From positions 62,001 to 126,000 of the forward strand of contig NW_026854510.1 of NCBI RefSeq assembly GCF_026571515.1: 64,000 bases of DNA. Reading direction: 5' to 3'. Positions 33,044-56,748 of the stretch are shown here, one piece after another (position 1 is the first letter of the stretch; the number at the start of each line of letters is the position of its first letter). Under the pieces are notes generated by a model that was not told the DNA's origin, did not search any database, and saw nothing but the letters and a program-made list of their open reading frames with translations. The DNA is from Ruditapes philippinarum. Taxonomy: Eukaryota. The translations under genes and the position numbers were made by a program.

Positions 33044-36000
33044 TCATAATTCAACATTGCCATTGCGAACATCTTCTGATTTGGCATCAGCACTTGAGCT
33101 GCCATTTACTTCCGGTGATCCACCGCCATTTTGTGTAACTGTGCTCCCTGGTACGTCGTTCATGGCCTCGTTATCAAATGCCTGATTCTGATGATTTGGT
33201 GCTTCAGCGTTATTTCCGCTTATGTTAACCTTTTCAGAACGCCTGAAAGAAAGTTTAATGCATTTATATAGTGTTAACGCACGTTTTTTCGTGTTATAAC
33301 GTCTGCAAAGTCCCGAGGAACGGTTGGTGCCCGAGCCCGGTAGGGCGAGGGCTTCAACAGTTCCGAGGGACTCTGCAGATTTTATTACACGACAAAAAAC
33401 GTGCGTTGACGCTATTATAGCATATTTTTAAAAAAAAATCGTGATGTATATTTAATGCAAAGCACATACATTAAATCCTTGTCCTTGGACGGTATTTATC
33501 CAATTCTACATGTTTTACGTATGCGTTTTATTTTTCCGGGGCCAACTACTTTTGAAATTCAAATGCTCAGAACCGTTCGAAAATTCGAATTTTAATTGAT
33601 TTAACAAAGCTTATCATTGGAGATTTATTAACTCAAGAATAAAAAACATTAAATTACTCTGCCCAAGATGAAACATGACCCTCAGAAATTCTTAGAATGA
33701 TTTCAGATTGACGGTAGAAAAAACATGATTTTATGCTATAATAAAAGTAATTTTATTCCAAATGTAGGATCACTGGGAAACGCCCTAAAACTAATATTAA
33801 CTTTTAAGTATGAAAACAAAAATTCATGAACATTTAAAGCTGCATACCTCCAGATGAGCCAAAATATTCCAAGAAAATTAGACATAGGCAAAATGTACTA
33901 AGATTGTAAGTAAAGTAAACAGATAAAAGATTCAAATGATAATTTATATCTTATGTGATTTTTTGCATTATTTATCACCATATTTCTACTACGTTACTTA
34001 CGCAGTAGGGGCTATTTTTGCATATTTTGACCCCTTTTTTGTAATTTACAAGGAGTATAAGTACCGATATGCAATGTGTCAATTACTTTCTTTGTTTACT
34101 TCACACTATTTTACTTTAAAATTTTCATGAACATAAGCATGAATCTGGAGGCATGCTGCTTCAAAAAAAATCTGGAAGCATATTCATACAATACATGTAT
34201 ATAAATATATATCAACAGAAAATGTATATGCTTAATCATTTAAATGAATGATGTTATTAAACATAAAAAGAATATATATGCCTCTACTGTGTAAGTTATC
34301 TAGTTATGTACTGAATATCAAGTGTTCTCCGAAATCAATTCAATAGTTAACAGGAAGTATTTCAGCGATTGACTTTAGTGCTACTAAAGATAATATTCGA
34401 TTAGAGATCGTGCAAATTGGACACTGGTACTGTAAACACGCTACCGACATATAAACTAAAATTTGCCAAGCCGCCAATAAACCATTACATACATATAAAT
34501 GACTAGACTTACCTTTTTCTTCCGTTATGACAAAATACTCCGATTACTACAGCTATTACTACGAGACCAACAATAGCACCGACAACAATTACTGAAATAT
34601 GAAAATATGCGTATTAATAGAAACCTATGTGCACATGTATTATAGTTAAACTTAGTTTTACAGCTGCACTTAGTTCTTAGATCTTTCATAAAGGATAATT
34701 TATACCTTGACAAGCACATTCTTTTACAACATTTATATTCTCTTTGTTATGACATTTCTAGTATGTCTATTCTGAATTGTAAAGGCAAGATTTAAATTCC
34801 ATTAATCAATAATTTTAGAAAGATGAATATATATCATATACAAATAACTTACTGTATGTGTCGTTATTCATATCAAACGCTGAACTTTTACTTTTTCCAG
34901 TGTCGAAAAAAACGTTCATTCCACTTTCACCAGCTTTATCAGGCATTGTTCGAGACGTATCTTCAACCAAAACTTTCCCCTCTACCATGTCCAAGTTTTT
35001 CTTTGGTGTAACTTGTTCATTATTGACTTCATTTGATGGAATCTTTGGAATAATAGGTTCAGGAATATCTTCGTTAACTGTACCACTTCTATCCTGTGTA
35101 TTAACGGCGGTCAACTTCGGAACAGAAGTTGACATATTTTCTACTGTCTTGTGTGTGGATGTACTAAATAATTCTGGAACCGATGGAGTACTTTCCTTTA
35201 TTCCAAGAATAATTTGCTTTTCGATGTCGGCTAAAACATCAGGAAGTACAGCAGTATCTGAAGATTCCGTTATGCTACCTATATTGTTAGGAATACCAGC
35301 ATGTACACTCTTAACGAATTCTCCTACAATCATATCTTCAACATTGTTTGAGGTAATATCTGTAGCTGAAGTCGTTTGTTTTTCCGTGAAACTGTCTGAT
35401 ATAGAACGTGTAGATGAAGGTTTAAGTGTTGTACGTTCGTATCTGTCAGTTTGAATATCTTCTCTAAAAGTATATGTGGTTGTTGGTATGAAAACTGTGG
35501 TTGGATTTGGCGTCTTTTGTGTTGTTGTTTTAACACTCCCTTGGATGATGTCAAAAGGCATTGCATCGGTGGAAGAAAGTACATTATGCTGATCAATGCT
35601 ATTGTCAATCATATATTCATTTACAATCCTGTCGGTACTTGTTGTTTGATCTGATAAAGCAGTCCCATGTAAATTGGACGAAGAAGATGAAATACTTGTA
35701 CTTGTTTCTTGACGTGCAACGCTTAGTAAATTAGTGTCCACAAGACCGGTAAATTTTGTATTCACATTTTCAGTAATACTGTCTGGTGTAGATTCCGTGG
35801 CGACATCTTGAATAGAGGTCTCACTTAGCCGATTAACAAATGATAACTGACTAACTTCACTGTCTATCAATATAGGAGTGTTTTCTCTTAAATTAATTTC
35901 AGATAAAGAAGTGTGTGTTGTGTCAAAGAATGATGCCTGCTCATCTGTATTGGTCAAAGTTTGTGTCATAATTTTTTTCTCTGATAAAGGTTCAACATTT

Positions 36001-39000
36001 GACAATGTTTCATTAATGTCATGGATGAATGTACCAACCCTTTCAGATTTGATAGCATCTGACATCTGTGTGTTGTCTGTAACGTTTGTTTCAAATGTAG
36101 ACTCATTTTGATGAGGAACAAAAGTAAAGTTATTAATGTCTCCTTCGCTTTGCACAGATGTTGCTCCAATTGCTGGAAACTCAAATGAATGTAAAGTTGC
36201 TGCTTCTCCAGCCAGATATTGCCCCTGGTCAATATTAGTTGATATTTGGGTCAAATTCATTTGGGGTGAATGCTCACTTTTTGATAAAATTTCATCACTG
36301 TGATGAATGAATGTCAAATTGTTAACATTTTCCATGACAACATCCGGCATTTGTGTTGGCGTGTTTTCTGTAACGTTTAATTCAGATATTGACTCGCTTA
36401 AACGATAAACCAATGTCATATTGTTAATGTCTGTTTCGTTTGTGACAGGTGTCGCTATACTTGCTGGAACATCAAATGAATAAGAAGCTGCTGTTTCCGC
36501 AGTCAAGTATTGTTCCTGCTCAATAGCATTAGATGATGTTTCAGTCAAGTTCATTTTTGGTAAATATTCATTTTTTGATAAAGTTTCATCAATGCGATGG
36601 ACAAATGTCAAATTACTGGTATCAACCTTTTCTGTGATAACATCCGGCATTTGTGTTGGTGTTATTTCTGTTACGTTTATTTCAGATACTGTCTCGCTTA
36701 AACGATGAACAAATGTCATACGGTTCATGTCGGTTTCGCTTTGAACTGTTGTCGCTAAACTTGCTGGAACATCAAAAGAATACGGTCTTGTTGTTTCATC
36801 AGCCAAATATGACCCATTTTCAATAATATTAGATGATGCTTGAGTCACGTTTATTTGTGGTAAATGTTCACTTTTATATAAGGTTTCGTCAATGTTATGG
36901 ACGAATGTTAAATTACTAGTATCAACATTTTCTGTGACAACATCTGGCATTTGTGTTGATGTGGTTCCGGTAACGTTAATTTCAGATACTGACTCGCTTA
37001 AGCGCTGAGCGATTGTCATATTGTTAACGTTTGTTTCGTTTTGCACTGGTGTCACTACATTTTCTGGAACGTCGAATGAATGAGAAATTGCTGTTTCATC
37101 AGCCAAATATTGTCCCTGTTCAACAACATTATTTGATGTTTCAGTCAAATTTATCTGTGGTAAATGTTCACTTTTTGATAAAGTTTCATCAATCCGATGA
37201 ACAAATGTCAAATTATCAGCTTTTAGCGTAACAACTTCCATCATTTGTGTCATTGTTTCCTCTGTAACGTTTATTTCAGGTACAGACCCATTCAGGCGAT
37301 GAGCGAATGCCATAGAATCAATAGCATCTTTAAGTATTGGTGCAGTTTCACTCGACGACAGACTTTCATCAGCTATTGTAGTCGCATCTGGAACAAATGT
37401 TCTTTGAGTAACACTTTCATCTTTAGTTTGATAAAGAACGTTATTTAAATTTTGTACATCTTCAATATGACTGTTTGTAAAGTTGTCAATAATTGCATCA
37501 GCAATATCTAGTATTGTGTCTGTCTTGTTGACATGATATGGGTCACTGATATTGTTTGTTATAGATAAATTACTAACATTCATTTCTCTTTTTTCTGGTG
37601 TAACTTTGTCAGAACCGTCGACAGGCAATGAAGTTTTTTCTGCAAAGGCAACTGCTTCTTGGTCAAACACCGTATCGGTTTGATTGAAATAAGACTCTGA
37701 AGTCCCATTGTTTTCATGTAATGCAGACAAATGATCTACAGTCTTATCTTGGAAAAATGTATATGCCTTGTCGAAAGAAGATCTCATAGATTCAGTTGCA
37801 TTTACTTCGTACATTGATATGTTACTTTGGTCGTGAGAAGCTTGTAAGGGAACGTTATTGTTATCAATAATTGGTATTGTTTCATTTGAAGATTCGATTA
37901 AACCAGAGTTGTGATCTGTGACAATGTCAGAACGATTTTCGACATTCTTTTCAACTGGCATTTTGTACGTAGAACTTTCAAAAGTGTTTCTCTTTTCGAA
38001 TCCAGTATTTGTGAACCTATTTTCAAATCCCGAAAAGTTACTTGCTTGAGATTCGGTGAATATATCCATTATTGATGCATCAGTGTCGTTTACTGTTGCG
38101 TTTTGACTTAATTGTTCTTTATCAATCAAATCTAGTGACCTTGGTGTTGTTCCCATGCTCAGAACTGTCAGTGGATCAGAGACGAAGTTCAGACTGCCAT
38201 TGAATGTGTCATTTAAGCTATCATTTGAGTCTTTCATGTGATTGGCTAAACTACCAACTGTTGATGATTCCATCAAGATATGGACATTTGTTTCTACATC
38301 ACTATGTAGTGTTTGGTTGTTTTGTTCATTTACCATTTCCTGTAATAATTCTTGTGAACGATTATTGACTGTTGGATCTGTCATTTCAAACTGAAATCCA
38401 GGAAGTGTTGTTGGATATAATTCATTACTCGTGACATTAACAACAGAATTACCACTGTCTTGCTTCGATTCATTTATAGTTTTATTTTCATTTTGAACTA
38501 TAAAATCACTTGACATTGGAAGCGTAGTATTTTCTGTTACATATGGAATTTTCATCGGTATATTTGCAATAATATCGATAGGTTCTGAGCTTTCCATAAT
38601 TAAACGTGCTTCGTTTGTTGTGTAAGGGGATGTACGTAATGCATTATTGGTAACTTCGGTACTGAGTAAAGTGTCATCAGTAGCATTGCTTTGAAAAGTT
38701 GATGATTCCAATGTTACAGCAAAATTGTTAGAATGATTGTCGAATTGTTGAATGTTCATGACACTATTATTAACAGCGTTTGTCTCAATAGAACTGATGC
38801 TTTTATTATTGACAAAACTGTTCAAATTAATATTTAGAATTAAAGTGTCATTTTCGTTGTGTGTTTTATAGGCATATGAACTTGTAAGATCATCAGTTGT
38901 GTTCTCTGTGCTTTGATTCGATAAGATCATCACTGGATCAAGAGCTGGAAATTTCAGTGAATAGTTGCTGTCATTAGCATCTGATGAGTTACTTGACATG

Positions 39001-42000
39001 CTGAAAATGTCAGATTCGACAGAAGCACCGGCGCCCATATTGAATGAATTTGATATGTCTACTGGCAATGTTGTCCCGGTAACATCAGATTTTAAAAATA
39101 AATCAGTGTTCGAATTTAGTGAATTGGAAATTTCATTTGAATTCACTGAATTTGAAATGGGAACTCTCGTAGTTGTTTCAGGTTTGTATGTTGTTGTACT
39201 TTCTTGAACCACCATTCTATCATTGAGAATATCTGCCTGGACTGAGCCAATATTCTGTATGGTTTTTGATAAACCGCTTCCTCCTCTGTTGAAAAGAACT
39301 GTACCAGTCAATAAAGTTGTTAAATCACCCTGAGTCTTTGTTTCAGATATATCTGATATGCTATTATCATAAAGAGAGTGTAAATTATCAACAGAATCAA
39401 TGTGTGATGTATAATTAGTATTGTTGGTACTATTGTCTGCAGAGCTTGTGAACACAATGTCTAAATCATGAGGTGTGAATGATGCATTAGAAGACAGGGA
39501 AAGGTCACCACTTGAATTGTTAACTGTGTTAATGTCGCCTGAAAATCGCATTGATAAATCTGCACCAGATACTACAGAAACTGCTTCTGATGGAACCACT
39601 TCGGCATGTGAAGCTGCGGGTATAGTTTCAGTTATCACTGATCTCACAGTTGAATCTACAGACAAAGCTCTATCTGTTGATATCGTTCCAGCTGTGGTAC
39701 TTTCATATGCAATGTCTGCTACTGTCGCATTGATAGCTGAAGCCCGTGAAGTGGCATCTGTTGATATCGCACCAGTTATTGTAACTTTTGATATTTTTTC
39801 CATTGATTTAAGGGTTGCATCAGTTATATCTATAGCTAATCCTGCTGCATTTGTAGTTATATTTTCTGATCGTATCAATGATGCAACTGTTGCTGGCATT
39901 GTTGAAATAACCTCTGCTGTTTCAGTCGTTTGTTGTGTTGTTTGTTGTGGTGTTTGATCTGTTGTTGCCGTGTTGTCCATACTCGGAGAGCTCATCTCAT
40001 TTGCTGTTGTTGAATAGTTCATAGAGACATCTGCATTTGTACTATTACTTTCAATTATTACGTCATTAATAACATTTGAGTTATCCTGAACGCTAGATGG
40101 TGTAGTTGAAGAAAATTCTTCCTCTATGTCTGCAGTGCATGACACTGTTACCGTATCATCGATTCCTGTAAAAGTAATTTGAAACGCATTTTATACCACT
40201 CTATCGTGTCAAAATATAGCAATGACACAACAATGCATGTGTACACTAGGTTATTGAATAAACAAATTAAGTCAAGCACATCTGACATGTATTGTTCAAT
40301 GGATTAACTGGTAAAACTTAGTGCTAGTGAGATGTTATCAATATTCACATCATAATGCACACTTCTCTAGAAATATTTCTTTTTTTATTTCCTTAAGTAA
40401 ATATTAAGTAAAAGACAACAATAAATGAGCCGTGTCATGACAAAACAAACATAATGGGTTTGCGACCAGCATGGATCAAGACCAGCCTGTGCATCCGCGC
40501 AGTCTGATCAGGATCCATACTGTTCCCTTCAGTTTCTCTACATGTTATAGGATTTGAAAGCGAACAGCATGGATCCTGATCAGACTGCGCGGATGCACAG
40601 GCTGGTCTGGATCCATGCTGGTCGCAAACCCATTATGTTGGTTTTGTCGTGACACAGCTCAAATATCAATACATGAATGTCATACATAGATATACCCACT
40701 CATTTATCACTGGTGTACTTTTATAATATCTTTTAGTTTATTTATTAATTTATACTTCTAGCAAATTTATCGAAACAAATGTAAATCATTTAATGATAGC
40801 TTACGTCCAGCAATTTCCAGAACGAGACAGTAGTTTTTATCGTATAAGTCTGAATACGTCTCAAACGTCGCAACACCAGCATTGTATTGTGACGTATCAA
40901 GGTAGGTTCCGGACATTAAACATTGAAACCGTATACTGTTTCCTGACGACGAGTACAGCCTAGAAAACAATGTATAAGATATATGTGTTGTACAAGATTT
41001 AAAAGTTGTTAACATAAAATTACAACCATTGATTATAGACCCATAGAGCCCTAGAAATCCTCTCTTTTTTATGCTTCTCAACAGCTTTGATTTTTGGTGC
41101 CCAAAATGTTACTCGTTGGCCAATTACCTGAGCCTGAGAGCTGTTATAGTGACGGGAGTCAAAATACATTCAGAGCCAAATACCTCGCTTTCATCAAAGC
41201 TATAACCTCCAAATTTTGTTTTGCAAGAATGCAAAAAAGTAGGAATGCAGCGGGGAAGAAAACCATTTTACACGCGGAAAACGTAAGGATTACAAATGAC
41301 TGCGCATTTCAGGACAGAACTAACTGGATAAAAGTAAAATCAATTTCTCTTTACCCTTCAACAACATCGAAAATTACGTACCTTATCGCAGAATTGCATT
41401 CTGGGTAGTTAGGAGCCACGTAGGTGACGAGTTTCATGACGCTGGAGTTTGTTCCAAATGTACACGAACAGTTACTAACAGCCGGGTCGTATGATGCGGT
41501 ATCTATAAGCACTCTTTCTCCGGAGTACGTTCCAGGTACACACATCTTAGCAACTGTAATTTAATAAAATATATTTTAACCAATCAAACTTGCATGCATT
41601 CTATTTACCAATTAAACCTACAAAAAAGTTAAGTAAAGGCATAAAATTTATGTCTCTAGTATTTGTCAATTTTGGATACAGTAGATCTTAATGGTATATA
41701 ATGAAATTATATTTAATTATGTTATATTATAACATCAAATATGTTTACAGCGTTCAATAAAGTAATGTTATACAAATTAGATTATTTCAATTAGTGGTAT
41801 GACCTGATGAATGGTGACATATAAGAAGGCGGCAAGTAAAATACCATTGACCACAACAATGTGGCAGAGGTAAGTGAAATATTTATAGCCAAAGAATGTT
41901 TGCTATGATTAATTATGATTAGTTATGATATGTTTTTATATTACATACTATAAATGATATACTTGGGTGTTTCAGTATAAGTACTAATAAGTAAATAACA

Positions 42001-45000
42001 TAATTAATGAAATGATATCATTTAATATCTCATTCTTTTCAAACACGTGTGTATCTGAGCACATTGAATCTAGTGATATTATGTCTTAAACGTTTTAACC
42101 TATGATACTGACCACCTTGTAGTACATTCCACCCTGTGTCTATAGGACACAGATTTACAGACTCATTTGATGGATGAGTGCAAAGTCAGTTACGAAACGA
42201 CGTATTTAATTTCAAAAGAAAACGGATTTATTGTTGTTTGATATACAAGATGTGTTTCTTTCACTAATATCCTTGGAGAGAGGTCAACTTTTTTATGCAT
42301 AGAGACCTCCCACCTCAAGCGTAGTCTCTCTTTCAATATCATGAAAATATGATTTAGTGTCGTGTAACACACGTGTGCACACAGTTACCAAGATTTTAAG
42401 TTAAAATTGGTGAATAAATATTGGAGTTGTGAAGCTTGCACTGGGATGACTGCTGTAAAATAATCAACCAGCTGTTGCGTTTCTTTTTTAGATACACAGT
42501 ATTAATGTATCATTTTTTATCATTAGTTTTTATATATTTTATTCTAATAAGTTTATTTATTTATTTATTTATTTATTTATTTGAGGTGAAGCAAATTGAA
42601 TCACAATCATGTATCTAGTATTCGTAAAATAGTGTAGTTTAAATGGTTTGGGAATGTTTGACGTGTGGGATCGGGAATGGGTTGTACGCTACCAATCAAC
42701 TAGCCAAACAACTGTGGGGCAAACACTTTATGTAACTTTAAAGATTTGTCAATGGTAGTTAACATCTTTATTAATACGACTGGCTATAACTGATACATGC
42801 TGCTCAAAGATTTATGGACAATTTAACTACAAATTAAAGAGTTTGGAAACTCTGTTTTATGTGCGCAAATTATTGCGCATTTTATTTTGCGAAATTCAAG
42901 TTTCGTCACCCCGATAAGTATATTCAAGTAGAAAATAAATAACACATAATAAAATAATTGACAGAGATTTGTACATAAATACTGTGACTCAAGTTAGTAT
43001 TTTAAGCTGTTGAATCATACATTACTAACAGGAATATTTCATAAGATATTAATGTCGTAGGTCAATTAAGAGTGCTTATTTATAGTTTACATACATGTGT
43101 CATTACAGACAAAAACCGTTCTTGTTTTTTCCCCTGTCTTTATGACAATGTTTCTCTTTATATTTCTCGTTGAGACTGTCAAACCCGCGTAATATATGAT
43201 TTATTGTATTATATCGCACACATTTTCTAATAACAATTTTTACTAGTTTTACAATACTTATGAATTTATGACTGTGAGGGACTTTATTGTCATGACCGCG
43301 GCGGAACTTGATTGATAACCGAGTATAAACATTGGCGATCGGTCATTTCTAGTTGACCACTGACAACACACAATACACTGGTCAGTTGTCCTTCCCGTTA
43401 TACATGTCACGACGTGACGGACACTTAATGAGATTGAATCTGTCTGTATTAACATGATTACATTGAATTATGATTAAAACCTAAGACATCTTATTTAGAA
43501 CTATTGTATAAATGTCCTAACTTCTTTCAGTCCAGATTGTCGACCCTTACACCGACTTGTGATTTATACATAAGGCACATTAATGCCTTATTAAATTATA
43601 TTATAAACTAAACGTGTGTTCTTTTGCTATTACGTATAACTTTTGTAGGGCAGAATACAAAAAATATCCATAAGAACCCGATATGAAAATTTTTAATGCC
43701 TCTTGATATACAGCACATATGTTGTCAAAGACATCCTAAGCAAATGAATTAGCTAAATGGTATCTTTGAAATTTATGACATAACTACTTGCTATGATTAT
43801 AGATTAGAAGCTACATTTGTATAGAATTCGAAAAATGACCCTACCGACGCCTGTTTAACATATTGGTTATATACATTAAAGAATATGAAATGCATATTTA
43901 CGACTGATTTTTTTTGTATTTCAAATAAATTCGGACGGTAAACCTACCTATTTTTTAATCACATGCTTAGAATTGTATCTAAAATAATCATTTTTTTTAA
44001 AAAATAACGCTGCGCCATTGATAAACGACAAAAAGTTTCTTTGACCCATACTTTTCTGTTCCATTAAAACTTGCAAATTTTTGTTTCAGTGGACCATAAT
44101 TTTCCCCCGATATAATTTTTTCTGATTTTCTGTTTGTCAATTTCTACCAATTCTAAGTTATATAAAGATAGACTGAGTAAATCTTTAATTTAACTGATGA
44201 AAATATAATTGAGCCGCGTCAGGACAAAATCAACATAGTGCGTTTGCGACCTCTATGGATCCAGACCAGCCTGCACATCCGCGCAGTCTGATTAGGATCC
44301 ATGCTGTTCGCTATCAGTTACTCTACTTGTAATAGGGTTTGTAAGCGAACAACATGGATTCTGATCAGACTGCGCGGATGTGCAGGCTGTTCTGGATCCA
44401 TGCTGGTCGCAAACGCATTGCGTTGGTTTTGTCATGACACGGCTCATATTTTTGTTGTTGTTCTATACATAACTGATAATGAAGTTTCACTTAAATCACC
44501 AATATGTTTCAAACAAGATGGTAAACATTTGTTATTTTTTGTACTTATGTTAAGAATACATGTATAATGAAGTTTAATAATATAAAGTATTAGTTGATTT
44601 TTGAAACATTGTCAGTTATACACAAAATACATTAAAATATTTATAGATTTTATCCAACTTGGTATACTGATTTTGTATTTAGAGTTTTTTCTCTTGGAGG
44701 AAATAAAGATATTATAATTATTATTATTTATTTTTGTTCAGATGACTTCTTTGATCAATACATTGACACATTCAATTAGGATTAATATGTTGCAAATTGT
44801 AAAAGAACTACAAATAATTATGATTAGAATATAATAAAACGAGACTCTATCAAAAGGAAACAATAGTATATAGCATGCTTTTAGCAAATAAAATATCATC
44901 AGTGATTTATAATATTACTTTTTTTCAACAGCTTCAAAAGCTTTGTTGTAATCATAATTTACATGTCACTGTTGCCGGTGTACGCACGAACAAACAGACT

Positions 45001-45529
45001 GATATTTGAAGCAGAACCAACCTAAAGACAAATGTATATGCATATATATTTGGAAATACATGTAATAAGAATATTAACCAACACCCAATATATGATATAT
45101 GTACACAGAAACTGTATTGTAGTTTAGTTTAATGTAGAAACAATACTTAAGTCTATATTAACGTAAACATTATTCATTATAAAAACTTCTGTAAACTTAC
45201 CATTGACGCCTTCTGGACAAGCTTGACCATGCACTATAATAGAAAAATAAAACCAATTACAGCTTTAGAACTCCTTCGTATTTTTACTCTTTATAATTTA
45301 CAATATCATTTGATATGTATTAATTAAGCATATTTTCACATTTATTGAAATATTTCTCGGATCCATACTGGCACAGAATCATTGCTACATGTTTTTATTT
45401 ATTTTTTTCTCTATTTTTTTTTATTATTATTATCATTTTTAATACTAATTCAAATAAGATGAAATAAACAATACCTTCAACAGCAGCCACTATTAAAACC
45501 AACAGAGTTAATCCGGGAAGGAAAGTCAT
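33044..45529 (-). CDS. Type I membrane mucin-like protein M1, 7 exons (45529-45475, 45233-45201, 41553-41382, 40959-40805, 40165-34853, 34591-34513, 33242-33044), ~2001 aa
   Basis: All junctions are GT-AG and phase-compatible (1,1,2,1,1,2); total 6006 nt. Signal MTFLPGLTLLVLIVAAVEVHG; 8-Cys domain; 5.3-kb S/T/N/D/E-rich stalk exon; TM IIVVGAIVGLVVIAVVIGVFC followed by GRKRR; tail ends NVEL. Exons 1-2 are the least certain part. Confidence 0.85.
33265..33420. mobile_element. ~155-bp hairpin element in last intron of M1
   Basis: ATAGTGTTAACGCACGTTTTTT...CTGCAAAGTCCC...GAGCCCGGTAGGGCGAG...GGGACTCTGCAG...AAAAAACGTGCGTTGACGCTAT. May extend to the ATGCTATAA inverted repeat near 33734-33742. Confidence 0.65.
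33838..34160. mobile_element. MITE family C, TTAA-flanked (Kolobok-like)
   Basis: TIRs AGCTGCATACCTCCAGAT / ATCTGGAGGCATGCTGCT; inverted homologue at 63612-63968. Confidence 0.78.
35990..37310 (-). repeat. Coding ~100-aa (~300-bp) tandem repeat, about 4 copies, in the M1 stalk
   Basis: Unit NLTFVHRIDETLSKSEHLPQINLTETS...GQYLADET...SFDVPA...ETDINNMTFVHRLSESVSEINVTE.TPTQMPDVVTE. Confidence 0.9.
40427..40660. mobile_element. MITE family A in M1 intron 4
   Basis: Same TIRs; AAAT TSD on both sides. Confidence 0.93.
42552..42716 (-). mobile_element. Degenerate SINE-like insertion with (AAAT)n tail
   Basis: Minus-strand A-box-like TGGCTAGTTGATTGG head and an (ATTT)n microsatellite at 42552-42582. 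Confidence 0.35.
44211..44445. mobile_element. MITE family A in M1 intron 2
   Basis: Same TIRs; flanks AATT/ATAT. Confidence 0.92.
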
Positions 45530-47297
45530 TTTTAAATCCAGAGAATATATCTGCGAAATAATGTTTCTTCACAAATCTTTTTATAAGTTCAAATATTTGA
45601 TATATAAAAGTATTGTATTAGATAAATTAAAACTTTTCACACAGGAGTGTATAGTTTACGATAGTTTCTGTAAGTTCCACATTTTAGTTTTATTGTTATT
45701 TGTTATCAATAAATTTAATTCTGATGATATTCAATTATTAACCCAACGTTCAGTCCATCGCATCTTTAGTTAGTTGTATAAAAATAATATAGTATTATGT
45801 CAGTCTATCATAGATCATTATAAAACTTCTACTTTCTTTATCAAGCGGCTCTCCCGTGGAATGATTTGTTAAAGAATGAAGATATTTTTCTGTCAAAATG
45901 TATCGACGTTACTGACATTTACGGCGTAAACGGTGTCACGTGAATTACGCGATTCTTTTCGGTAACAATCGCCAACTTAGATTCGCCGTCATGACATGAC
46001 AATCGGATGCCCTCGGCAATTGTTGCAAGTTTGACAACTAAAGCTGTCGTCTGAAAAAATGTGTTATTACATAAAACACTTATTTCGATAGATCATTAAG
46101 ACATTTAGAAAACTCATTTTCAGACCATCATGACATTTTTTGCTATATGGTCAAAATTAGTTGGTGGTCCAATATTCACACAATTGAAATATCTTATGAG
46201 CAATTGTATGTATGGCGGCTCTAAGATACTTGCCATGAAACGCTACTATACGTTATTATCATCTTCGTTTCTATGAAATATTTTTAAACAAACAAAAAGT
46301 GCATCGCGAATTTAACTTAACACCGCTCAAGCCGGTGCAAGGGGGCGTGAGGGATGATGCACATATTCCTTATCCCTCATGTACAGACTCAATCAAACCG
46401 AGTCTGCAATTCTCTTGTAATTTAGTTGTGATTAATGCTTCTGAGGGTTCTCATTGTCTCCAGATTTTCATAATTCTTTACATTTTCAACATCCTCAAAA
46501 ATCCTTTAAAGGTCTTATTCAAGTAAGATTTTTTAAAATTATTTTAAATTCATGAACCTACTAGTGTCGTTTTCCCTAAAGGAATTATTTCCCAGTAAGA
46601 TCTTGTAACCCATCTTTCTAGAGCTGGGAGTCAGACAAATTACAAGAGCAGTGCTTTCCTTAGAAAAGGTAAAATTATTGAAACTGAAAAAATTACCAGG
46701 GAAAAAAAAGATTTTAGATATACATTGCAAATTCCTCGGACATAACAAAACGGTATTTGACTGACAACACTGTCGGCACTAAAAACTGTCAAAAGTTTTT
46801 TTTTAATCTGTTTAATTAAAGAAAAATAAAAAAAAAAACTAGTACACTTTTTATCATTTATATTTATGCCTTAAATTTTGAGTAGATTAAAATACACTTT
46901 AATAATGTATAAATTTGTATTTGTAATTAAGTGTAAGAATATAATTATAAAGGTACTGTACTGTGTGTAAAACCACATGCACCAATTAAAAAGACTAAAA
47001 TGATAATTTGTGAATATTAAATTTAAAAAATTGAGTGAATCATAATTTTTTTGTGGTGATATCCTGCAATACATTTTGTAAGAATTATCATTCAGGTGCT
47101 TCACTTCGGTAAAGGATAATATAACCTTCAAAAATTAGATTTTAGAAATTATTAGTAAGATGTGCAGAATTTCTTTAAAAGGTCATTAAATGTGAGGTAA
47201 CAGGTCTGACACTCGAAGTGTTACATTATTCTAATATTTACCCACCATTTTCCGTTTTTTACTATAATTACTTGTATTTTTGCAATGTGATTAAAAT

Positions 47298-47542
47298 GAG
47301 CCGCGTCATGACAGAAACAACATACACGTAATGGGTTTGCGACCAGCATGGATCCAGACCAGCCTGCGCATCCGCGCAGTCTGATAAGGATCAGGATCCA
47401 TGCCGTTCGTTTACTACTTACTCTATTACAAGTGTAGAAACTGACAGCGAACATCATGAATCCTGATCAGACTGCGCAGGCTGGTCTGGATCCATTCTGA
47501 TGGTCGCATACTCAGTATGTTGGTTTTGTCGTGACACGGCTC
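47298..47542. mobile_element. MITE family A between M2 and M1
   Basis: Same TIRs with small indels; AAAT TSD on both sides. Confidence 0.92.
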
Positions 47543-49373: not shown

Positions 49374-52300
49374 TCAAGAGTCTGGATGTACAAGAACGTC
49401 TATCATGTCATTTACCACCTCTTCCTGTCTGTCAGGCGCAGGAAAAACATCCGGTACAGGCGCTTGCTCGTTACCAGGGGATGGCTCCGGAAGTTCAGAT
49501 ACTTTTATTTCAGGAACGTCATTACTATTAAAGGTTTTATTGTCAAAGGCCATGGAATAAGTATTAGTATTCTCTGCAGTTGGAGGTTTAGTTTCCCATA
49601 AAGAAAGATCCATTTCCTCATTGTCAATATCATTTTTGTGGAAGTGATTGTTAGACGGAGATTCGCCTCCGTCTGGTGGCAGGAAGTGACGTTTTTCATT
49701 CGTCAATGGTGTAAACGGTGCTGTTCCACTCATCTCATACGAATTATTACGATTTTTACTGAAAAGTAACGTTCACAAGTATAAAAAAGTATCAAATTAT
49801 ATTCATGTACAGGTAGTTGCATTTACATATCTGATTCAACAAATGATATTAAAGTAGGCAAAGCTATTGGAACGGAAGCACTAACTAAAAGTCAAGGCCT
49901 AGGTAAATTGATCTAGAGGTACACAATCATGTCTCACACAAGTTTGAGGCTAATTGTTTTATCTACATATTGCAAAACTTGAACATTTCGTTCTCTTAAT
50001 TCTGATAACTAAATAAAACAAAATGGCTGCAATGAAACTGAAAAAATGGCGTGTATATGCATTTTATTTATTTGAATTATGTTCTTTTTTAAGAATGCGC
50101 GTATTGGCTTTAATCGGACAAGCCCAAGTAAGATCCCACTTTGCTTTTACGTATAACCATATCTGATGTTATGCATCTGTCAAACTCTATGCGGGCTACT
50201 TTGATTAAGACACCGGATGTACTAAAATGTAACACGAATATTTAAGATAAGATATCATAGGATACTTACGAACATGATAATATGATTGCAACAATCACAA
50301 TTAAGACAACACCGACACATGACCCAATCACAGCTGCATCTGAAATATTTTAATATAACGTTAAAAGGGCCCTTTTTTACACCAATTCGGAGAAAACCTC
50401 AGGAAATCGAAAAAATTGCTGGATATGATGTTTTATATAAATGAATAACTTGAAGCTTATAAGGGTTATATATCAATTTTACGATTGCATTTCGTTGACA
50501 TAAAATAAGTTAAGTTCCTTTTATAATCACATGATTTAAGAACTCAAATTGATGTATTTAAAAGGTTACAGATTGCACAGACACTTGGGGTTTGGAGCTC
50601 AAAACGCCTTTAAAATCGAAATAAAATACATATTTGTCAATCCCAGCACATGTACTGATCATATATATCAAAAAAACTTAATATAAGCCGTTTTGAAAAA
50701 AATTCATATTTCAACATCTATAATTATTATAGATGTTGAAATATGATTTTTTTTCAAAACGGCTTATATTAAGTTTTTTTTTATATATGTGATCAGTACA
50801 TGTGCTGGGATTGACAAATATGCATTTTATTTGGATTTTAAAGGCGTTTTGAGCTCCAAACCCCAAGTGTCTGTGACAGATTGCAGGATAAAAACGATAG
50901 CGTAGAGTATATACTAGCATTTTTTCCCAGCACGCTGACTATTCAAGATATAGAGGATATTACATGAGAGTAGGTTCAATACTGAATTTATTGAACAGGT
51001 TGAATAAACTTATTACATGCGTGCCTCAAGAATAGTTTTTCATTGACGTGCCTATAGTGTAACGGGTATGTGATAAAACTAAATAATCAGTACTTACATG
51101 GGAAAGTTGTTTTGGTTCCCTTTTGCTGCTTATCCCCAGTGGAATCTTCTGTCGAGCCTTGGGTTGGTTCTGTCGTGGTACCCGATGTTTCTTTCGCCGA
51201 AGTAGATGTCGTAGTTCCCGATGTTTCTTTTTCAGTTGAAGGTGTCGTAGTTTCCGATGTTTCCTTTTCAGTAGTTGATGTCGTAGTTCCGGAAGTTTCC
51301 TTTTCAGTTGTAGGTGTCGTAGTTCCCGATGTTTCTTTCTCCGTTGTAGATGTCGTAGTTCCGGATGTTTCCTTTTCAGTTGTAGGTGTCGTAGTTCCCG
51401 ATGTTTCCTTTTCAGTAGTTGATGTCGTAGTTCCCGATGTTTCCTTTTCAGTGGTAGGTGTCGTAGTTCCCGATGTTTCTTTCTCCGTTGTAGATGTCGT
51501 AGTTCCGGATGTTTCCTTTTCAGTTGTAGGTGTCGTAGTTCCCGATGATTCCTTTTCAGTAGTTGATGTCGTAGTTCCCGATGTTTCCTTTTCAGTAGTA
51601 GAGGTCGTAGTTCCGGAAGTTTCTTTTTCAGTAGTAGATGTCGTAGTTCCCGATGTTTCCTTTTCAGTGGTAGGTGTCGTAGTTCCCGATGTAACGTTTG
51701 CTGTGGAAGATGTCGTAGTTCCCGATGTTTCTTTCTCCGTTTTAGATGTCGTAGTTCTCGATGTTTCCTTTTCAGTAGTAGATGTCGTAGTTCCAGATGT
51801 TTCCTTTTCAGTTGTAGGTGTCGTAGTTCCCGATGTAACGTTTGCTGTGGAAGATGTCGTAGTTCCCGATGATTCTTTCTCCGTTGTAGATGTCGTAGTT
51901 CCGGATGTTTCCTTTTCAGTAGTAGATGCAGTAGTTCCCGATGTTTCCTTTTCAGTTGTAGGTGTCGTAGTTCCCGATGTTACGTTTACTGTGGAAGATG
52001 TCGTAGTTCCCGACGTCTCTTTCTCTGTTGAAGATGTGGTAGTTCCCGATGTTTCCTTTTCAGTTGTAGGTGTCGTAGTTCCCGATGTTTCCTTTTCAGT
52101 TGCAGGTGTCGTAGTTCCCGATGTTTCCTTCTCCGTTGTAGATGTCGTAGTTCCCGATGTTTCCTTTTCTGTAGTAGATGTCGTCATTCCCGATGTTTCC
52201 TTTCCCGTAGAAGATGTCGTAGTTCCCGATGTACTGTTTCTAGTGGTGGATGTCGTAGTTCTCGATGTTTCTTTTTCCGTAGGAGATGTCGAAGTTCCAG

Positions 52301-55300
52301 GCGTTTTCATTTCTGTAGTAGAAATCGAATTTCCCGATGTATCATTCTTTGTGGTTGATGTCGTAGTTCCCGATGCATCCTTTTCAGTAGTAGATACAGT
52401 ACTTATCGATGTTTCCTGTTCTGTGGTAGATAGCGTAGTGGTAGCCGATGTTTCCTTCTGTGTTGTTTGCTTTGTTGTGTTACCCGATGTTTCCTCGCGA
52501 GTTGTTGCCGTCGTGGTGCCCGATGTTACTTGTGTGGTAGAATCTTTTGGTGTTTGTGTATCGTTCTGCGTTGATGGCTGCGTTAAAGTTGTTTTACTTA
52601 CTTGTGTTGTGGTATCGGTGGATGAGTGTGTGCCTGTCTGAGTCGTGGTCTCGATCGTGGACTCAGTCGTCTTTGGGGTGCACAATGTTGTGTTAGCTGT
52701 CGCAATTTGTGTAGTAGATGTCGTATCTGTTGGTTTACTGGTAGTTTGTTGTTCAGTTGTTGTAGATTGTGAGGAAGATATGTTCTGTGTTGTTGCTTCT
52801 GTTTGTACTGGCAATGTTTGTGTAACTGTTTGTGTAGTTGACGGGCGAGTCGTTGTTTGCCCTGATGATTGAGTGGTTGATTGTGTTGTATGCTGAGTTG
52901 TTGTATTAGTTGATGGACCGGGGCTAGTGGTTTGTGTAGTTTTTATAGCTTCACACGATAACGTTACATTGTTTGAGTTACCTGTAACCATGAAACACAA
53001 AAAAGACATTACATGTACACATTCACGAGTGTTCATTAATTTTAGAAAAGTGCCATTAAAATAAATGTGATTTAAAAATTGTTTAATTGTTAAATTTGAA
53101 TCAAACTTATACGTGTAAACTAAATGTGAAGCATCAATAATAAATATCATTTTTCAAGACAGAAATTATATACAAATATTAATCATAATATACATGTACA
53201 TGTACATGTTTATTTTTTATTTTTTTGAGAAGGGAAACAGTCTGAGTTAGTTACAACTTAATCGTTACTCTATGTGCATATTTTTATTACGACTTTCAAT
53301 TAAATTAATCTGCAGAACATCTTGAAATGAGGTAGAGAAGAATTATTTATACTCATATATACCCGTAGGATAAATAACCCAACAGTAATCATATAAATAG
53401 CCGTTCTCTGGTGGCGTGAGGTCACGTGATAACGTAAAAACAGCTTGGTTTCCTTGAAACGTTGTACTGATATCGGAACAAGATATGTTGTTTTTTCTTC
53501 TGGTAGTATTAATGTTGATTTGTGTACCACAATCCGTCATATTCGAAGGTGTATATGCGCTAATTACTAAGCTAGAAAAGAAGACATAGTTTCATACAAT
53601 ATACTTTATTATATCTTAATTAACTAACTTTTAAGGTAAAGAAATACTATTCACTTCAATTTGAAAATAACTTTAGCTGAATCGACTTAAAAATATTGTC
53701 TTTAAGTTCTTGTTATATAAACAGAGAGATAAAAATGACATTAAATAAAAGCATGTACCTGGTGCTTTGAGAGTTGTCTTGCTCTTCTATGTATAAGGTA
53801 CACTTGCAGGAGGACGCGCCATCTGGCGGCATTGCAAAACGTGCAGACGACACATCGAGCAAAACGAAGCCTGAGCTGCTAGCGAAAGAGTTGTAACACA
53901 TCTGTGCAACTTAATAATAGAATAGAATAATGAAAAATGAATGTATTTATTTATTTATTTTTGTTTATGTGTTTTAATATCTTTAAGGGACTCCACTGAG
54001 GTTTAAAAGCCCAAAAACATAACATTTGAATTTCTTACATAAATGAGCTGGGGCACTTTAGACAGAAATATAATTATGCAAAGAAAGTTAAGAAATATAC
54101 TTTGAAATAATTAAAAATCGTGTTTATATGCTTTTCTTAGTCCGATTTGAGTGAAAAGCGTTTAAACGCTTTTCATTTTGGGTCATTTATTTACAATGCA
54201 ACTAGATATTCTGGTAAAACGGAGTGCGCGAATGATCTGAAATTTTGCACAAAGATTAGAGGTCTAAACCTACATCAAATGGTACATTTATATGGAAAAA
54301 AATTCAATCCCATCATATCAAAAAACCTCAGTGGAGTACCTTCAAACAAAACATTTAGAATGATGAACCTATGTAAGTTTTTACATGTACAAATATAATA
54401 GTGTTCTAGCACGTGCCAACAGTTTTGATATTGTTATGAAATAAGGTATAAATGTCCTAAAATAGCTAAACCAATGATTTAATTTTCAGGAGAAAGGATT
54501 ACCTTCACTAGGATTCGGTGCTCCTTGTTTACATGTTGTATTTGGTCCATTGTTCTGACATTTACATACCATACAAACTGTAATATACATGTATATAGAG
54601 AACCATTACATGGCCGAAACCGGAAGTAGTTTTTGCCATGAATAGAGCCAGACCAGTCAGTCTAACCAGGCGCTTTACTGTTTACTGACTAGCTGTAAAA
54701 TTTACATTGATATCCCTTAAGTTGATAAAAGGTAAAGAAATAGTTATTATGGCCTATTCGTTTATTAAACTTTCCCTATAAACATGAAAAGAACTTCGTC
54801 ATCAGTACAAATGTCCTCGTGCCTATGTTGGAAAAAGGCGTAAAATGAAACAAACAAACAAACAAATGTCCTCGCAAAATAAACCAATGCGAAAGCCCTT
54901 TAATAATAACATAACTGTACATAGTAAATGTAAATGCAAATTTCATAATAATTTATGAAATAATATTGTATATAATGTTTCAATATTTACTTAACAAGAA
55001 AAAATTAAGCAGGCCTGTTTTTTTTACACAATCTAAGCTGTAATCTGAAGAAGAACATAATGACTTTATTTTCTTTTCATACCATATTTCTGCTTACTCT
55101 TATGAAACGTCAATAATCGTATTGAAATTCGTAAATGAAAAAATAACTATAATTATTCGTTAAATGCACTGATGAACATGTGCTGGATAATGGAGTTTTA
55201 AACTTTCAATACATTCAAGTAGCCCTTGTTTTATGTACAGTTTGAAAATCCCAGTATACCCTTTCCACTGGTCACAATAAATGGAGCGTGATTGATTCCT

Positions 55301-56748
55301 GGGCAGAAATGTCGTCTGCTGACAATATTCTTCATTAAATATTCATTTCATTCATTTCATAATGGCCCACTAACAGGTAATTTTGTCACCAATAATTTAT
55401 TTATAGATCGCGGCTGTCAACATGTAAAATCGTCATAGTTTTCGTATATCATGATACAACGGGCATTTTTAATACGTATCATATCAAGTCTTTGTGCTTA
55501 ATTATGAATAAAATTATGATGTATTTTGCTCTAGAACATTTTATTATTTGTTTTATATGTAACTTGGACAATGTATATCTCACACTTGCAAACAACATCC
55601 GCATATAATTATTTCGTGCTTTTGTTCTTACTTATACTTAATACTATAAACGTAATTATTTATTGAATTGCATACATTCAACAAGAGACCAATTCACTTT
55701 AAAGTTCGTCTATACATGACAATAATAATGTCGCAAGTATATAACACACCGTTCGCAGAAAACAACTAAGATGATGACGGTTTAATTAACATACAAGATA
55801 AAACTGCACTTAAATTATTTCAATACTCAAATCTGGCAATTATATTACCTATTTACTTTTTTTACTCAATATTGATTTTTTTTTAGAATTTTCAACATTA
55901 GGGTTAGACTGTACATTGTTATACAGATCAATCCACGAGAAAGAACCTATTCAATTATTGATTGTGATTTTTACTACTATTAAATGAAGCCAGAGAAAAT
56001 AATAAATCACCGTTATGTTGGGAACTTGGGGAAACGTCTTTTAAAGTCATATTATGGCTCAGATATCCATATTTATTAAATTCTTTAGAAATGTTCAATA
56101 TACGTTTAATAATGTTTTGATAATGAATTTAGAGCATTTTAGATGTTGAACATCGGATCGTACAGTAATGTGTCAATAGTATTTTGACTTTCATACAAAA
56201 TACTCATTCACTAAAATTAAAAATAGCCAAGAAATCAAAAGGAGCAAAGATAATTCATGGTTATGGCAAATGAGTATTTCTTATGAAACTGTAACAAAAT
56301 ACCAAAAATATACAGTTTGAGAAATAAAAATAATAGCATGTCTGGGGCATAATGTGCCTTTAATATTGAAAAAAATCGTCGCAGTACTTAAACAATTAAA
56401 AACTAGACAGTACAAAATGAACTGTTCAATAAGCAATACAATATACCACATCCAGTGTAAACATCAATACAAATGTATATACCGAAGTTTTTCTCTCAAA
56501 CAAACCAAGCAGGACGGAAAAAAAGTTTTGTCAAATAAATACTATGACTTGTTAAGAATATGCTATTTCAAACAAATAATGAATACATGACTGTACCTAT
56601 AATTGAAATTCAAATCAATATTAGTTTTAGAAATTCCTTTATTAAAAAAGATGTTTAACTTTTACAATCTTACACATAGATTTAAAACAACAAAATGCAA
56701 ACCTTGAAATATAACTGCAAGTAAAAGAACTAACGCCATTTGCGCCAT
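49374..56748 (-). CDS. Type I membrane mucin-like protein M2, 7 exons (56748-56703, 54577-54503, 53909-53759, 53571-53363, 52981-51098, 50339-50270, 49758-49374), ~939 aa
   Basis: All junctions are GT-AG and phase-compatible (1,1,2,1,1,2); total 2820 nt. Signal MAQMALVLLLAVIFQVCMVCKC; 8-Cys domain; Thr-rich stalk; TM AAVIGSCVGVVLIVIVAIILSC; acidic Pro-rich cytoplasmic tail. Confidence 0.88.
50576..50875. mobile_element. 300-bp foldback (near-perfect palindrome) element with 8-bp TSD
   Basis: CACAGACACTTGGGG...CCCCAAGTGTCTGTG; arms ~150 bp with almost no loop (centre TATAATTATTATA). TSD ACAGATTG at 50568-50575 and 50876-50883. Confidence 0.92.
51170..52400 (-). repeat. Coding 39-bp (13-aa) mucin repeat TTEKETSGTTT(S/P), about 30 copies
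   Basis: Visible in the DNA (GTCGTAGTTCCCGATGTTTCCTTTTCAGT...) and in the 51087-53150 ORF. Confidence 0.95.
53986..54341. mobile_element. MITE family B in M2 intron 2
   Basis: TIRs AGGGACTCCACTGAGGTTT / AAACCTCAGTGGAGTACCT in a TTAA context; homologous to 9722-10013. Confidence 0.78.
54820..54861 (+). mobile_element. Extremely 5'-truncated S1-tail retroposition
   Basis: TGTTGGAAAAAGGCGTAAAATG(AAAC)n matches the S1 SINE tail; 13-bp TSD ACAAATGTCCTCG at 54807-54819 and 54862-54874. Confidence 0.8.

What the first reader, a model, noticed from the sequence alone, without database searches (positions are those of the whole stretch)
33044..56748. Tandem pair of membrane mucin-receptors sharing an unrecognised 8-Cys N-terminal domain
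Seen: M1 and M2 assemble into the same architecture (signal, Cys domain, single stalk exon, TM exon, tail exon) with identical intron phases 1,1,2,1,1,2. Their ~140-aa head domains align on 8 Cys: ACPEG/TCKQG, VAKMC/VAQMC, VLID/VLLD, NCSCTF/SCKCTL, ECNSAI/DCGTQI, FQC/ISC, NYCLVL/DYCWVI, VTVSC/VTLSC. I cannot match this spacing to EGF, SEA, VWD, CTLD, Ig or canonical CUB. Inference: a lineage-specific, beta-rich (possibly CUB-like) ligand-binding domain held above the glycocalyx, defining a poorly described cell-surface family. The ORF track misses it because it is split over four exons.
Basis: partly seen in the sequence, partly recalled or inferred. Interest (0 to 1): 0.8.

Follow-up and report, generated by a model that had tools for sequence, protein, structure and literature searches.

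The report
Clam membrane mucins with CUB-like heads
Two neighbouring Manila clam genes encode membrane proteins that hold a small, eight-cysteine, CUB-like domain on a long sugar-coated stalk; they belong to an undescribed family found so far only in molluscs, a modest but genuine addition to known cell-surface proteins.

Summary
Both minus-strand genes assemble into complete ORFs: M1 is 2001 aa and M2 is 939 aa. Each has 7 exons, GT-AG introns and phases 1,1,2,1,1,2.

- **M1:** letter for letter the NCBI protein 'mucin-3B-like [Ruditapes philippinarum]'.
- **M2:** junctions e1-e5 are present in spliced contigs from three independent studies.
- **Pairwise similarity:** the two heads are barely alike (BLASTP E=0.04 on one exon).
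- **Family membership:** an HMM built from 11 other family members picks the M1 and M2 head exons as the four best of 1966 window fragments, with E from 1.8e-18 to 1.6e-4. The next fragment scores 0.18.
- **Relatives:** found in bivalves (Sinanodonta, Solemya) and gastropods (Haliotis, Patella, Lottia, Gigantopelta). Most have the same signal-head-stalk-TM-tail plan, and none has a Pfam family on the head.
- **No sequence link to CUB:** Pfam CUB does not hit and hhalign gives probability 0.45%.

My reading is a divergent CUB-like binding module on a glycosylated stalk. Ligand and function are inferred, not shown.

The parts
45475..45529 (-). M1 exon 1: start codon and signal peptide (MTFLPGLTLLVLIVAAVE), ends in phase 1
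   Evidence: identical to the N-terminus of P0001
45201..45233 (-). M1 exon 2: start of the head, holds Cys 1 (QACPEG)
41382..41553 (-). M1 exon 3: head, Cys 2-5 (VAKMC ... NCSCTF ... APNYPECNSAIR)
   Evidence: family HMM E=1.8e-18, HMM positions 6-64
40805..40959 (-). M1 exon 4: head, Cys 6-7 (IRFQC ... NYCLVLE)
   Evidence: family HMM E=3e-11, HMM positions 63-115
34853..40165 (-). M1 exon 5: last head strand with Cys 8 (TVTVSC), then a 1770-aa stalk (25.8% Ser+Thr, 67 NxS/T sequons)
   Evidence: no Pfam domain
36068..37215 (-). Tandem repeat inside the M1 stalk: 300-bp unit (100 aa), 3.9 copies
34513..34591 (-). M1 exon 6: transmembrane segment (IIVVGAIVGLVVIAVVIGV) and basic stop-transfer residues
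33044..33242 (-). M1 exon 7: cytoplasmic tail with the ISG and AFDNEA motifs, and the stop codon
56703..56748 (-). M2 exon 1 coding part: start codon and signal peptide (MAQMALVLLLAVIFQ). The transcript contig runs at least 170 nt further upstream as 5' UTR.
   Evidence: joint 54577>56703 in three runs and record extents
54503..54577 (-). M2 exon 2: VCMVCKC (probably the end of the signal peptide) and Cys 1 (TTCKQG)
   Evidence: joints 54577>56703 and 53909>54503
53759..53909 (-). M2 exon 3: head, Cys 2-4 (VAQMC ... SCKCTL)
   Evidence: family HMM E=1.6e-4, HMM positions 7-43; joints
53363..53571 (-). M2 exon 4: head, Cys 5-7 (DCGTQI ... ISC ... DYCWVI); strongly polymorphic
   Evidence: family HMM E=2.4e-5, HMM positions 45-111; 15 nt differences in the RNA contigs
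51098..52981 (-). M2 exon 5: last head strand with Cys 8 (NVTLSC), then a 627-aa mucin stalk (58.2% Ser+Thr)
   Evidence: no Pfam domain
51171..52457 (-). Tandem repeat inside the M2 stalk: 36-bp unit (12 aa, TTSTTEKETSGT-like), 35.7 copies
50270..50339 (-). M2 exon 6: transmembrane segment (AAVIGSCVGVVLIVIVAIILSC)
   Evidence: splice not checked with reads
49374..49758 (-). M2 exon 7: cytoplasmic tail with the EMSG and MAFDNKT...NDVPE motifs, and the stop codon
   Evidence: splice not checked with reads

Best explanation
M1 and M2 are tandem paralogues, same strand, 3.8 kb apart. They belong to an undescribed family of type-I membrane glycoproteins found so far only in molluscs.

Each protein has a signal peptide and an all-beta head of about 125 aa with eight conserved Cys (probably four disulfides). 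It then has a long, unstructured, heavily glycosylated stalk encoded by one exon, one transmembrane helix, and a short cytoplasmic tail with small conserved motifs.

The head is predicted to fold as a CUB-like jelly-roll sandwich. It has no detectable sequence similarity to CUB or to any other Pfam family.

Most likely mechanism: the stalk acts as a stiff spacer that presents the head far above the membrane and glycocalyx. The head binds an extracellular protein or glycan partner, as CUB domains generally do. The tail motifs connect to trafficking or signalling inside the cell.

Shown: gene structure, splicing of M2 e1-e5, family membership, the absence of known sequence families, and a confident predicted fold. 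Inferred: homology to CUB, disulfide pairing, ligand binding, and the stalk's role as a spacer.
For: - Gene models and phases. M1 is identical to NCBI protein P0001.
- Spliced M2 contigs from three studies with GT..AG joints exactly at the model boundaries.
- Family: a phmmer search with the M1 head against 1.84 billion representatives gave 20 hits at E<=1e-3. About 15 are credible. The named ones come from Sinanodonta, Solemya, Haliotis (3 species), Patella, Gigantopelta and Lottia. Most share the signal-head-Ser/Thr stalk-TM-tail layout.
- M2 membership: an HMM built without M1 or M2 ranks M1e3, M1e4, M2e4 and M2e3 as the top four of 1966 six-frame fragments. Their E-values are 1.8e-18, 3e-11, 2.4e-5 and 1.6e-4; the next is 0.18. 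The two M2 exons cover adjacent, collinear parts of the HMM.
- Fold: the M1 head model has pLDDT 89.8 and pTM 0.83 with 11 strands. The Haliotis member's head has pLDDT 88-94.
- The ESM Atlas feature search also leads to CUB clusters, at 0.85-0.89; this is a lead only.
- Two further paralogues on contig C4464 have LDL-receptor class A exons next to the head exon (PF00057, 32.3 bits). CUB and LDLa are a frequent combination in membrane receptors.
- Tail motifs recur from bivalves to limpets: [ST][IL]SG after the basic stretch, and N-x-[AS]-x-[FV]-D.
Against: - Foldseek finds nothing convincing: E>=8e-4 and TM about 0.4 or lower.
- There is no sequence link to CUB. Pfam CUB does not hit any member at E<=10. 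hhalign of the family profile against three CUB domains from the same clam genome gives probability 0.45%.
- The family has eight Cys with a CxC pair, not the four of canonical CUB.
- The alignments behind the models are shallow (12 and 16 sequences).
- No ligand, localisation or tissue data exist.
- A raw RNA run showed no reads on the M2 exons.
- The M1 stalk is only 26% Ser+Thr, so an extended mucin-like rod is less certain for M1.
Confidence: 0.6

Rival explanations
1. The head is a lineage-specific domain that is not homologous to CUB. It only shares the common jelly-roll arrangement, by convergence or by very remote common ancestry with many beta sandwiches. Nothing about its function can then be borrowed from CUB.
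Against: CUB domains from many unrelated proteins dominate both VIA lists and cover nearly the whole domain, for example 103 of 109 spermadhesin residues. The matches start at family Cys 2. The spacing Cys2-Cys4-Cys5-Cys6 is 26/21-22/16-19 residues; the clam CUB L016 has 26/27/22. That comparison is my inference and was not tested residue by residue. Paralogues carry LDLa modules beside the head.
Confidence: 0.27
2. M1 and M2 are ordinary barrier or lubricating membrane mucins, as the NCBI name 'mucin-3B-like' implies. The head is only a folding or capping piece or an oligomerisation piece, with no specific ligand.
For: The M2 stalk is 58% Ser+Thr with about 36 twelve-residue repeats. Each protein has a TM segment and a tail. 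NCBI names M1 'mucin-3B-like' and the Haliotis member 'mucin-5AC-like'.
Against: No SEA, EGF or VWD domain is found in M1 or in the M2 stalk. These names therefore rest on nothing detectable beyond a Ser/Thr-rich composition. Across bivalves and gastropods, the head and short tail motifs stay alignable while the stalks do not align. Some Haliotis members are made of 2 to 5 heads with little stalk.
Confidence: 0.1
3. The M1 and M2 heads are unrelated, and their Cys alignment is chance among Cys-containing exons.
For: BLASTP between the head exons gives only E=0.04 for e3 and nothing for e4. Exon-level tblastn of the genome with M2e4 does not even find M1.
Against: An HMM built without either gene hits both M2 exons at E=2.4e-5 and 1.6e-4, in collinear, adjacent HMM ranges. 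Noise starts at 0.18. Introns 1, 2, 4, 5 and 6 are in the same places and phases. The tails share AFDN[EK]...NDVP.
Confidence: 0.03

Closest known systems
CUB domain (Pfam PF00431; spermadhesin, Kremen, C1s/MASP, neuropilin)
   Different: There is no sequence-profile similarity. The family has eight conserved Cys with a CxC pair instead of four. It also has an extra N-terminal Cys1-Cys2 segment before the part that aligns to CUB. Whether it has the Ca2+ site of many CUBs is unknown.
Heads on mucin stalks: fractalkine/CX3CL1 and CXCL16; CD93, thrombomodulin and endosialin (my own knowledge, not tested here)
   Same: The design principle is the same: a small disulfide-bonded binding domain at the tip of a Ser/Thr-rich glycosylated stalk, one TM helix and a short cytoplasmic tail.
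   Different: The head there is a chemokine fold or a C-type lectin fold, and those proteins are from vertebrates. No sequence or fold relation to the clam head is implied.
Vertebrate membrane-tethered mucins (MUC3/12/13/17), the source of the NCBI name 'mucin-3B-like'
   Same: A tandem-repeat Ser/Thr stalk encoded by one large exon (clear for M2), a TM segment and a cytoplasmic tail.
   Different: No SEA or EGF modules lie next to the membrane. The clam proteins have an N-terminal globular head, which those mucins lack. The M1 stalk is only 26% Ser+Thr.
CUB-LDLa membrane receptors (Neto1/2, LRP3/12, enteropeptidase/matriptase stems; my own knowledge)
   Same: The two C4464 paralogues have a CUB-like head exon followed by one or two LDLa exons, a stalk exon and a TM exon.
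   Different: M1 and M2 have no LDLa. Splicing of the C4464 genes was not checked. The heads there also fail the Pfam CUB model.

Membership tests
CUB domain (PF00431) | Match to the Pfam CUB profile at or above its cut-off (21.4 bits) | tested here: not met
   No CUB hit at E<=10 for the head exons, the M1 head or 16 family sequences. The same model finds 37 CUB exons in this genome. hhalign of the family against clam CUBs gives probability 0.45%.
CUB domain (PF00431) | Jelly-roll beta sandwich of about 10 strands with the spermadhesin topology | tested here: met
CUB domain (PF00431) | Four conserved Cys forming two disulfides (C1-C2, C3-C4) | tested here: inconclusive
   The family has eight invariant Cys. 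The spacing of Cys 2, 4, 5 and 6 (26/21-22/16-19) resembles the clam CUB L016 (26/27/22). No residue-level structural alignment or model coordinates were available to check equivalence or pairing.
CUB domain (PF00431) | Ca2+-binding acidic residues present in many ligand-binding CUBs | not testable with these tools
   This needs a residue-level superposition, and the tools return aligned ranges only.
Membrane-tethered mucin (MUC3-type) | Pro/Thr/Ser tandem-repeat domain in one large exon | tested here: met
   M2 has a 36-bp unit in 35.7 copies and 58.2% Ser+Thr. M1 meets this only partly, with 25.8% Ser+Thr and a 300-bp unit in 3.9 copies.
Membrane-tethered mucin (MUC3-type) | SEA (and EGF) module next to the membrane | tested here: not met
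   No SEA or EGF family in P0001 at E<=10, nor in the M2 stalk exon at E<=0.01.
ZP domain (the UniRef name of the Lottia member) | Match to the Zona pellucida profile | tested here: not met
   P0015 has no such Pfam hit at E<=0.01. No ZP or Ig-like chain appears among the top 50 structural matches.
The new molluscan 8-Cys head family (defined here) | Match to the family HMM with Cys at the eight conserved positions, plus a stalk, TM and tail | tested here: met
   M1 exons score E=1.8e-18 and 3e-11. M2 exons score 2.4e-5 and 1.6e-4 among 1966 fragments.

The most novel reading that the evidence does not exclude
The head may be a new, mollusc-restricted domain family that is not a true CUB. If so, these stalked proteins may be polymorphic recognition receptors for microbes, gametes or self/non-self. 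The second half of the M2 head exists as two deeply divergent alleles: 15 of 209 nt and 9 of 69 residues differ in exon 4, while the three upstream exons are identical. That pattern would fit balancing or diversifying selection on the binding face.
Probability: 0.18. Interest if true: 0.65.

Novelty: new variant of a known kind. Interest (0 to 1): 0.45.

Why it matters
Mollusc genomes are full of 'mucin-like' and 'uncharacterized' surface proteins that are named only from composition. This work gives one such group a definition. It has a conserved eight-Cys head with a confident CUB-like predicted fold, a fixed architecture and conserved tail motifs. Members occur from protobranch bivalves to limpets and abalone, and at least four occur in the Manila clam.

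That makes the group searchable with an HMM and testable with head-Fc probes, knock-down and in situ work. It also corrects misleading names such as mucin-3B-like, mucin-5AC-like and ZP domain-containing.

The divergent exon-4 alleles of M2 offer a concrete population-genetic question in an aquaculture species. This is not a new principle: binding heads on mucin stalks and divergent CUB-like domains are both well known.

Tried and rejected
- **Pfam** on single head exons, the M1 head, whole P0001, 10 homologues and 16 alignment members found nothing on the head. DUF7015 at E=0.08 appeared in one sequence only and I treat it as noise.
- **PDB sequence search** with the family profile gave only weak hits at the TM and tail (beta-dystroglycan, E=0.002), none to the head.
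- **Exon-level tblastn** of the clam genome with M1e3, M1e4 and M2e4 found only the exons themselves. A profile was needed to find the C4464 paralogues.
- **Word search for M2** with the first 120 residues of its stalk exon found no database protein of 345-1097 aa. M2 may be unannotated or modelled differently.
- **Word search with the Lottia head** found only itself, so the taxonomic range could not be extended.
- **Third copy rejected:** 'VTLSC' at window 1725-1739 and the fragment 1790-1969(-), E=0.18, do not read like a head.
- **Spurious phmmer hits:** five long hits with many short matched stretches (P0009, P0012, P0016, P0019, P0020). For the three scanned, Pfam found only unrelated or implausible domain sets (WD40, PPC and others). 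I set all five aside as spurious.
- **Literature:** two searches found nothing.
- **Motif argument dropped:** I first took APNYP in the head for the CUB 'SPNYP' motif. The structural matches place it in a different part of the domain.
- It held two neighbouring pieces of P0017. I stopped typing pieces and aligned whole stored proteins by id instead.
- M2 was tested exon by exon, so there is no structure model of the M2 head.
Full report
**What is there.** The window has no N. The region 33044-56748 holds two genes on the minus strand. The two large ORFs are their stalk exons: 34815-40145 and 51087-53150.

From three-frame views I set splice sites and assembled the coding sequences by coordinates. 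M1 has 7 exons and 2001 aa; M2 has 7 exons and 939 aa. All introns are GT-AG, and the phases are 1,1,2,1,1,2 in both. Each protein reads signal peptide, Cys-rich head spread over exons 2-5, stalk, transmembrane exon, tail exon. The M2 stop codon and the M1 start codon are 3.8 kb apart.

**Independent support for the models.**
- A word search with the M1 stalk exon returned one protein, P0001: 'mucin-3B-like [Ruditapes philippinarum]', 2001 aa. It is identical to my model, so the organism is the Manila clam.
- No database protein was found for M2.
- Fourteen probable RNA runs from seven studies hold 21-28% of the sampled words of the M2 gene region.
- I laid three of these runs, from three studies, on window 52650-56800. 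X1 and X2 each give one contig that joins 56703/54577, 54503/53909 and 53759/53571; in X4 a contig shows the first two. All skip CT..AC, which is GT..AG on the minus strand.
- Contigs in all three runs also join e4 to e5, with the last 10 nt of e4 replaced by a variant of equal length.
- M2 e1-e5 are therefore spliced as modelled. A raw RNA run had no reads on the M2 exons.

**Are the two heads related?** Directly they are barely alike. BLASTP gives E=0.04 for e3 against e3 and nothing for e4.

I searched the M1 head, as a stretch of the stored protein P0001, with phmmer against 1.84 billion representatives. That gave 20 hits at E<=1e-3, about 15 of them credible. The named ones come from Sinanodonta woodiana, Solemya velum, Haliotis rubra, H. 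rufescens, H. cracherodii, Patella caerulea, Gigantopelta aegis and Lottia gigantea. All are called hypothetical, uncharacterized or mucin-like. Most have the same plan: signal, head, Ser/Thr stalk, TM and short tail. The Haliotis members with two and five tandem heads are exceptions.

An HMM built from 11 of them, without M1 or M2, was run against all 1966 six-frame fragments of the window. The four best hits were M1e3 (1.8e-18), M1e4 (3e-11), M2e4 (2.4e-5) and M2e3 (1.6e-4). The next fragment scored 0.18. The two M2 exons fill adjacent HMM ranges, 7-43 and 45-111. The tails also share AFDN[EK]...NDVP. M1 and M2 are therefore divergent paralogues.

**Corrections to the observation.**
- Intron 3 is at HMM position about 63-66 in M1, and in exon-sized fragments of apparent M1 orthologues from unnamed sources. 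It is at about 44-46 in M2. It is absent in other members, where Cys 2-7 lie in one exon. Equal phases here do not mean equal positions.
- M2 has three extra Cys at the end of its signal region.
- The M1 stalk is 25.8% Ser+Thr with 67 sequons and four 100-aa repeats. The M2 stalk is a classical mucin stretch: 58.2% Ser+Thr and about 36 repeats of 12 aa.

**What the head is.** No Pfam family hits it in any member, even at E<=10, and no PDB sequence matches it.

AlphaFold with the family alignments gives confident all-beta models. The Haliotis rubra member has pLDDT 88-94 over the head, a disordered stalk and a TM helix. The M1 head has pLDDT 89.8, pTM 0.83 and 11 strands.

At sequence level there is no link. 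I took three single-exon CUB domains from this same genome and compared profiles; hhalign gave probability 0.45%.

I conclude that the head has a CUB-like jelly-roll fold (likely). It may be a very divergent member of the CUB superfamily, but that is not shown.

**More of the family in the clam.** A profile search of the 1.4-Gb assembly found two further copies about 79 kb apart on contig C4464. On the same strand, their head exon is followed by one or two LDL-receptor class A exons (PF00057 at 32.3 bits, plus weaker copies). After these comes a Ser/Thr stalk exon that starts with the Cys 8 strand. In the first copy there is also a TM exon. Splicing there is unverified.

**How it probably works.** The head and the short tail motifs stay alignable from protobranch bivalves to limpets, while the stalks do not align. 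That pattern fits a surface receptor or adhesion molecule. A disulfide-braced binding module is held far out on a glycosylated spacer, and the tail is read inside the cell. This resembles fractalkine or CD93-type proteins in design and CUB receptors in the nature of the head. Ligand, localisation and signalling are inferences.

**A side observation.** In the RNA contigs, M2 exon 4 differs from the genome at 15 of 209 nt. Nine residues are replaced and three codons change silently. Exons 1-3 (324 nt laid) show no difference. The binding half of the head thus exists as two divergent alleles.

**Limits and rule notes.**
- My joined M2 model was not sent to any search or fold tool, so M2 was tested exon by exon and has no model.
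I stopped that step and used whole stored proteins by id.

**Verdict.** This is a real, well-supported finding: a new, apparently mollusc-restricted family with a divergent CUB-like head on a membrane stalk. It is a new variant of known kinds and of moderate interest.

Noticed in passing
window 53363-53571 (M2 exon 4): Contigs of runs X1 and X2 carry an allele with 15 nt differences in this 209-nt exon. Nine residues are replaced and three codons change silently. Run X4 shares the variant exon end and 53420 G>C; its contig covers only 53373-53441. Exons 1-3 show none. It is a possible hot spot of balanced or diversifying polymorphism in the head.
   Followed up: partly
window 41382/40959 (M1 intron 3) and 53759/53571 (M2 intron 3): Intron 3 interrupts the head about 20 codons apart in M1 and M2, both in phase 2. 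It is missing in the C4464 paralogues and in fragments P0003 and P0004. Introns 2 and 4 are at conserved positions. This suggests independent gain or sliding of intron 3.
   Followed up: partly
L012 512-4547 and L013 637-7654 (G000:C4464, about 124.5 kb and 203.7 kb): Two more family members lie in tandem. The head exon (Cys 2-7 in one exon) is followed on the same strand by LDLa-coding fragments, then a stalk exon that begins with the Cys 8 strand (..IRIQC). If all are spliced together, the LDLa modules would sit between the last two strands of the head.
   Followed up: partly
P0017 (Haliotis rufescens, 371 aa) and P0024 (H. cracherodii, 781 aa): Abalone members consist of two and five tandem heads with short linkers. 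They end in a hydrophobic C-terminus rather than a long stalk, TM and tail. This may be a secreted or lipid-anchored multi-head form.
   Followed up: no
window 53901-54456 and 56125-56263 (M2 introns 2 and 1): Read and contig depth is very high in all four runs (thousands, against 14-35 on the exons). There are many variants and opposite-strand joints (54002/54301). These look like abundant, transcribed repeats, perhaps a hairpin-forming mobile element.
   Followed up: no
window about 40440-40640, 44301-44567 and 47224-47540: Three copies of one repeat are visible as similar translations (..LIRLRGCAGWSGSMLVANPL..). The copy in M1 intron 4 reads as an inverted repeat. They probably belong to one small mobile-element (MITE-like) family.
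   Followed up: no
window 6399-6989 (+), 20880-21593 (+), 27040-27660 (+): Neighbouring ORFs are a bHLH domain ORF (PF00010, 60.9 bits) and two Tctex-1 family ORFs (84.6 and 99.6 bits). A 306-aa ORF at 22765-23685 is just a translated tandem repeat.
   Followed up: partly
P0015 (Lottia gigantea): UniRef calls this family member 'ZP domain-containing protein'. No Zona pellucida match was found by Pfam, and no ZP-like structural match appeared, so the name looks wrong.
   Followed up: partly
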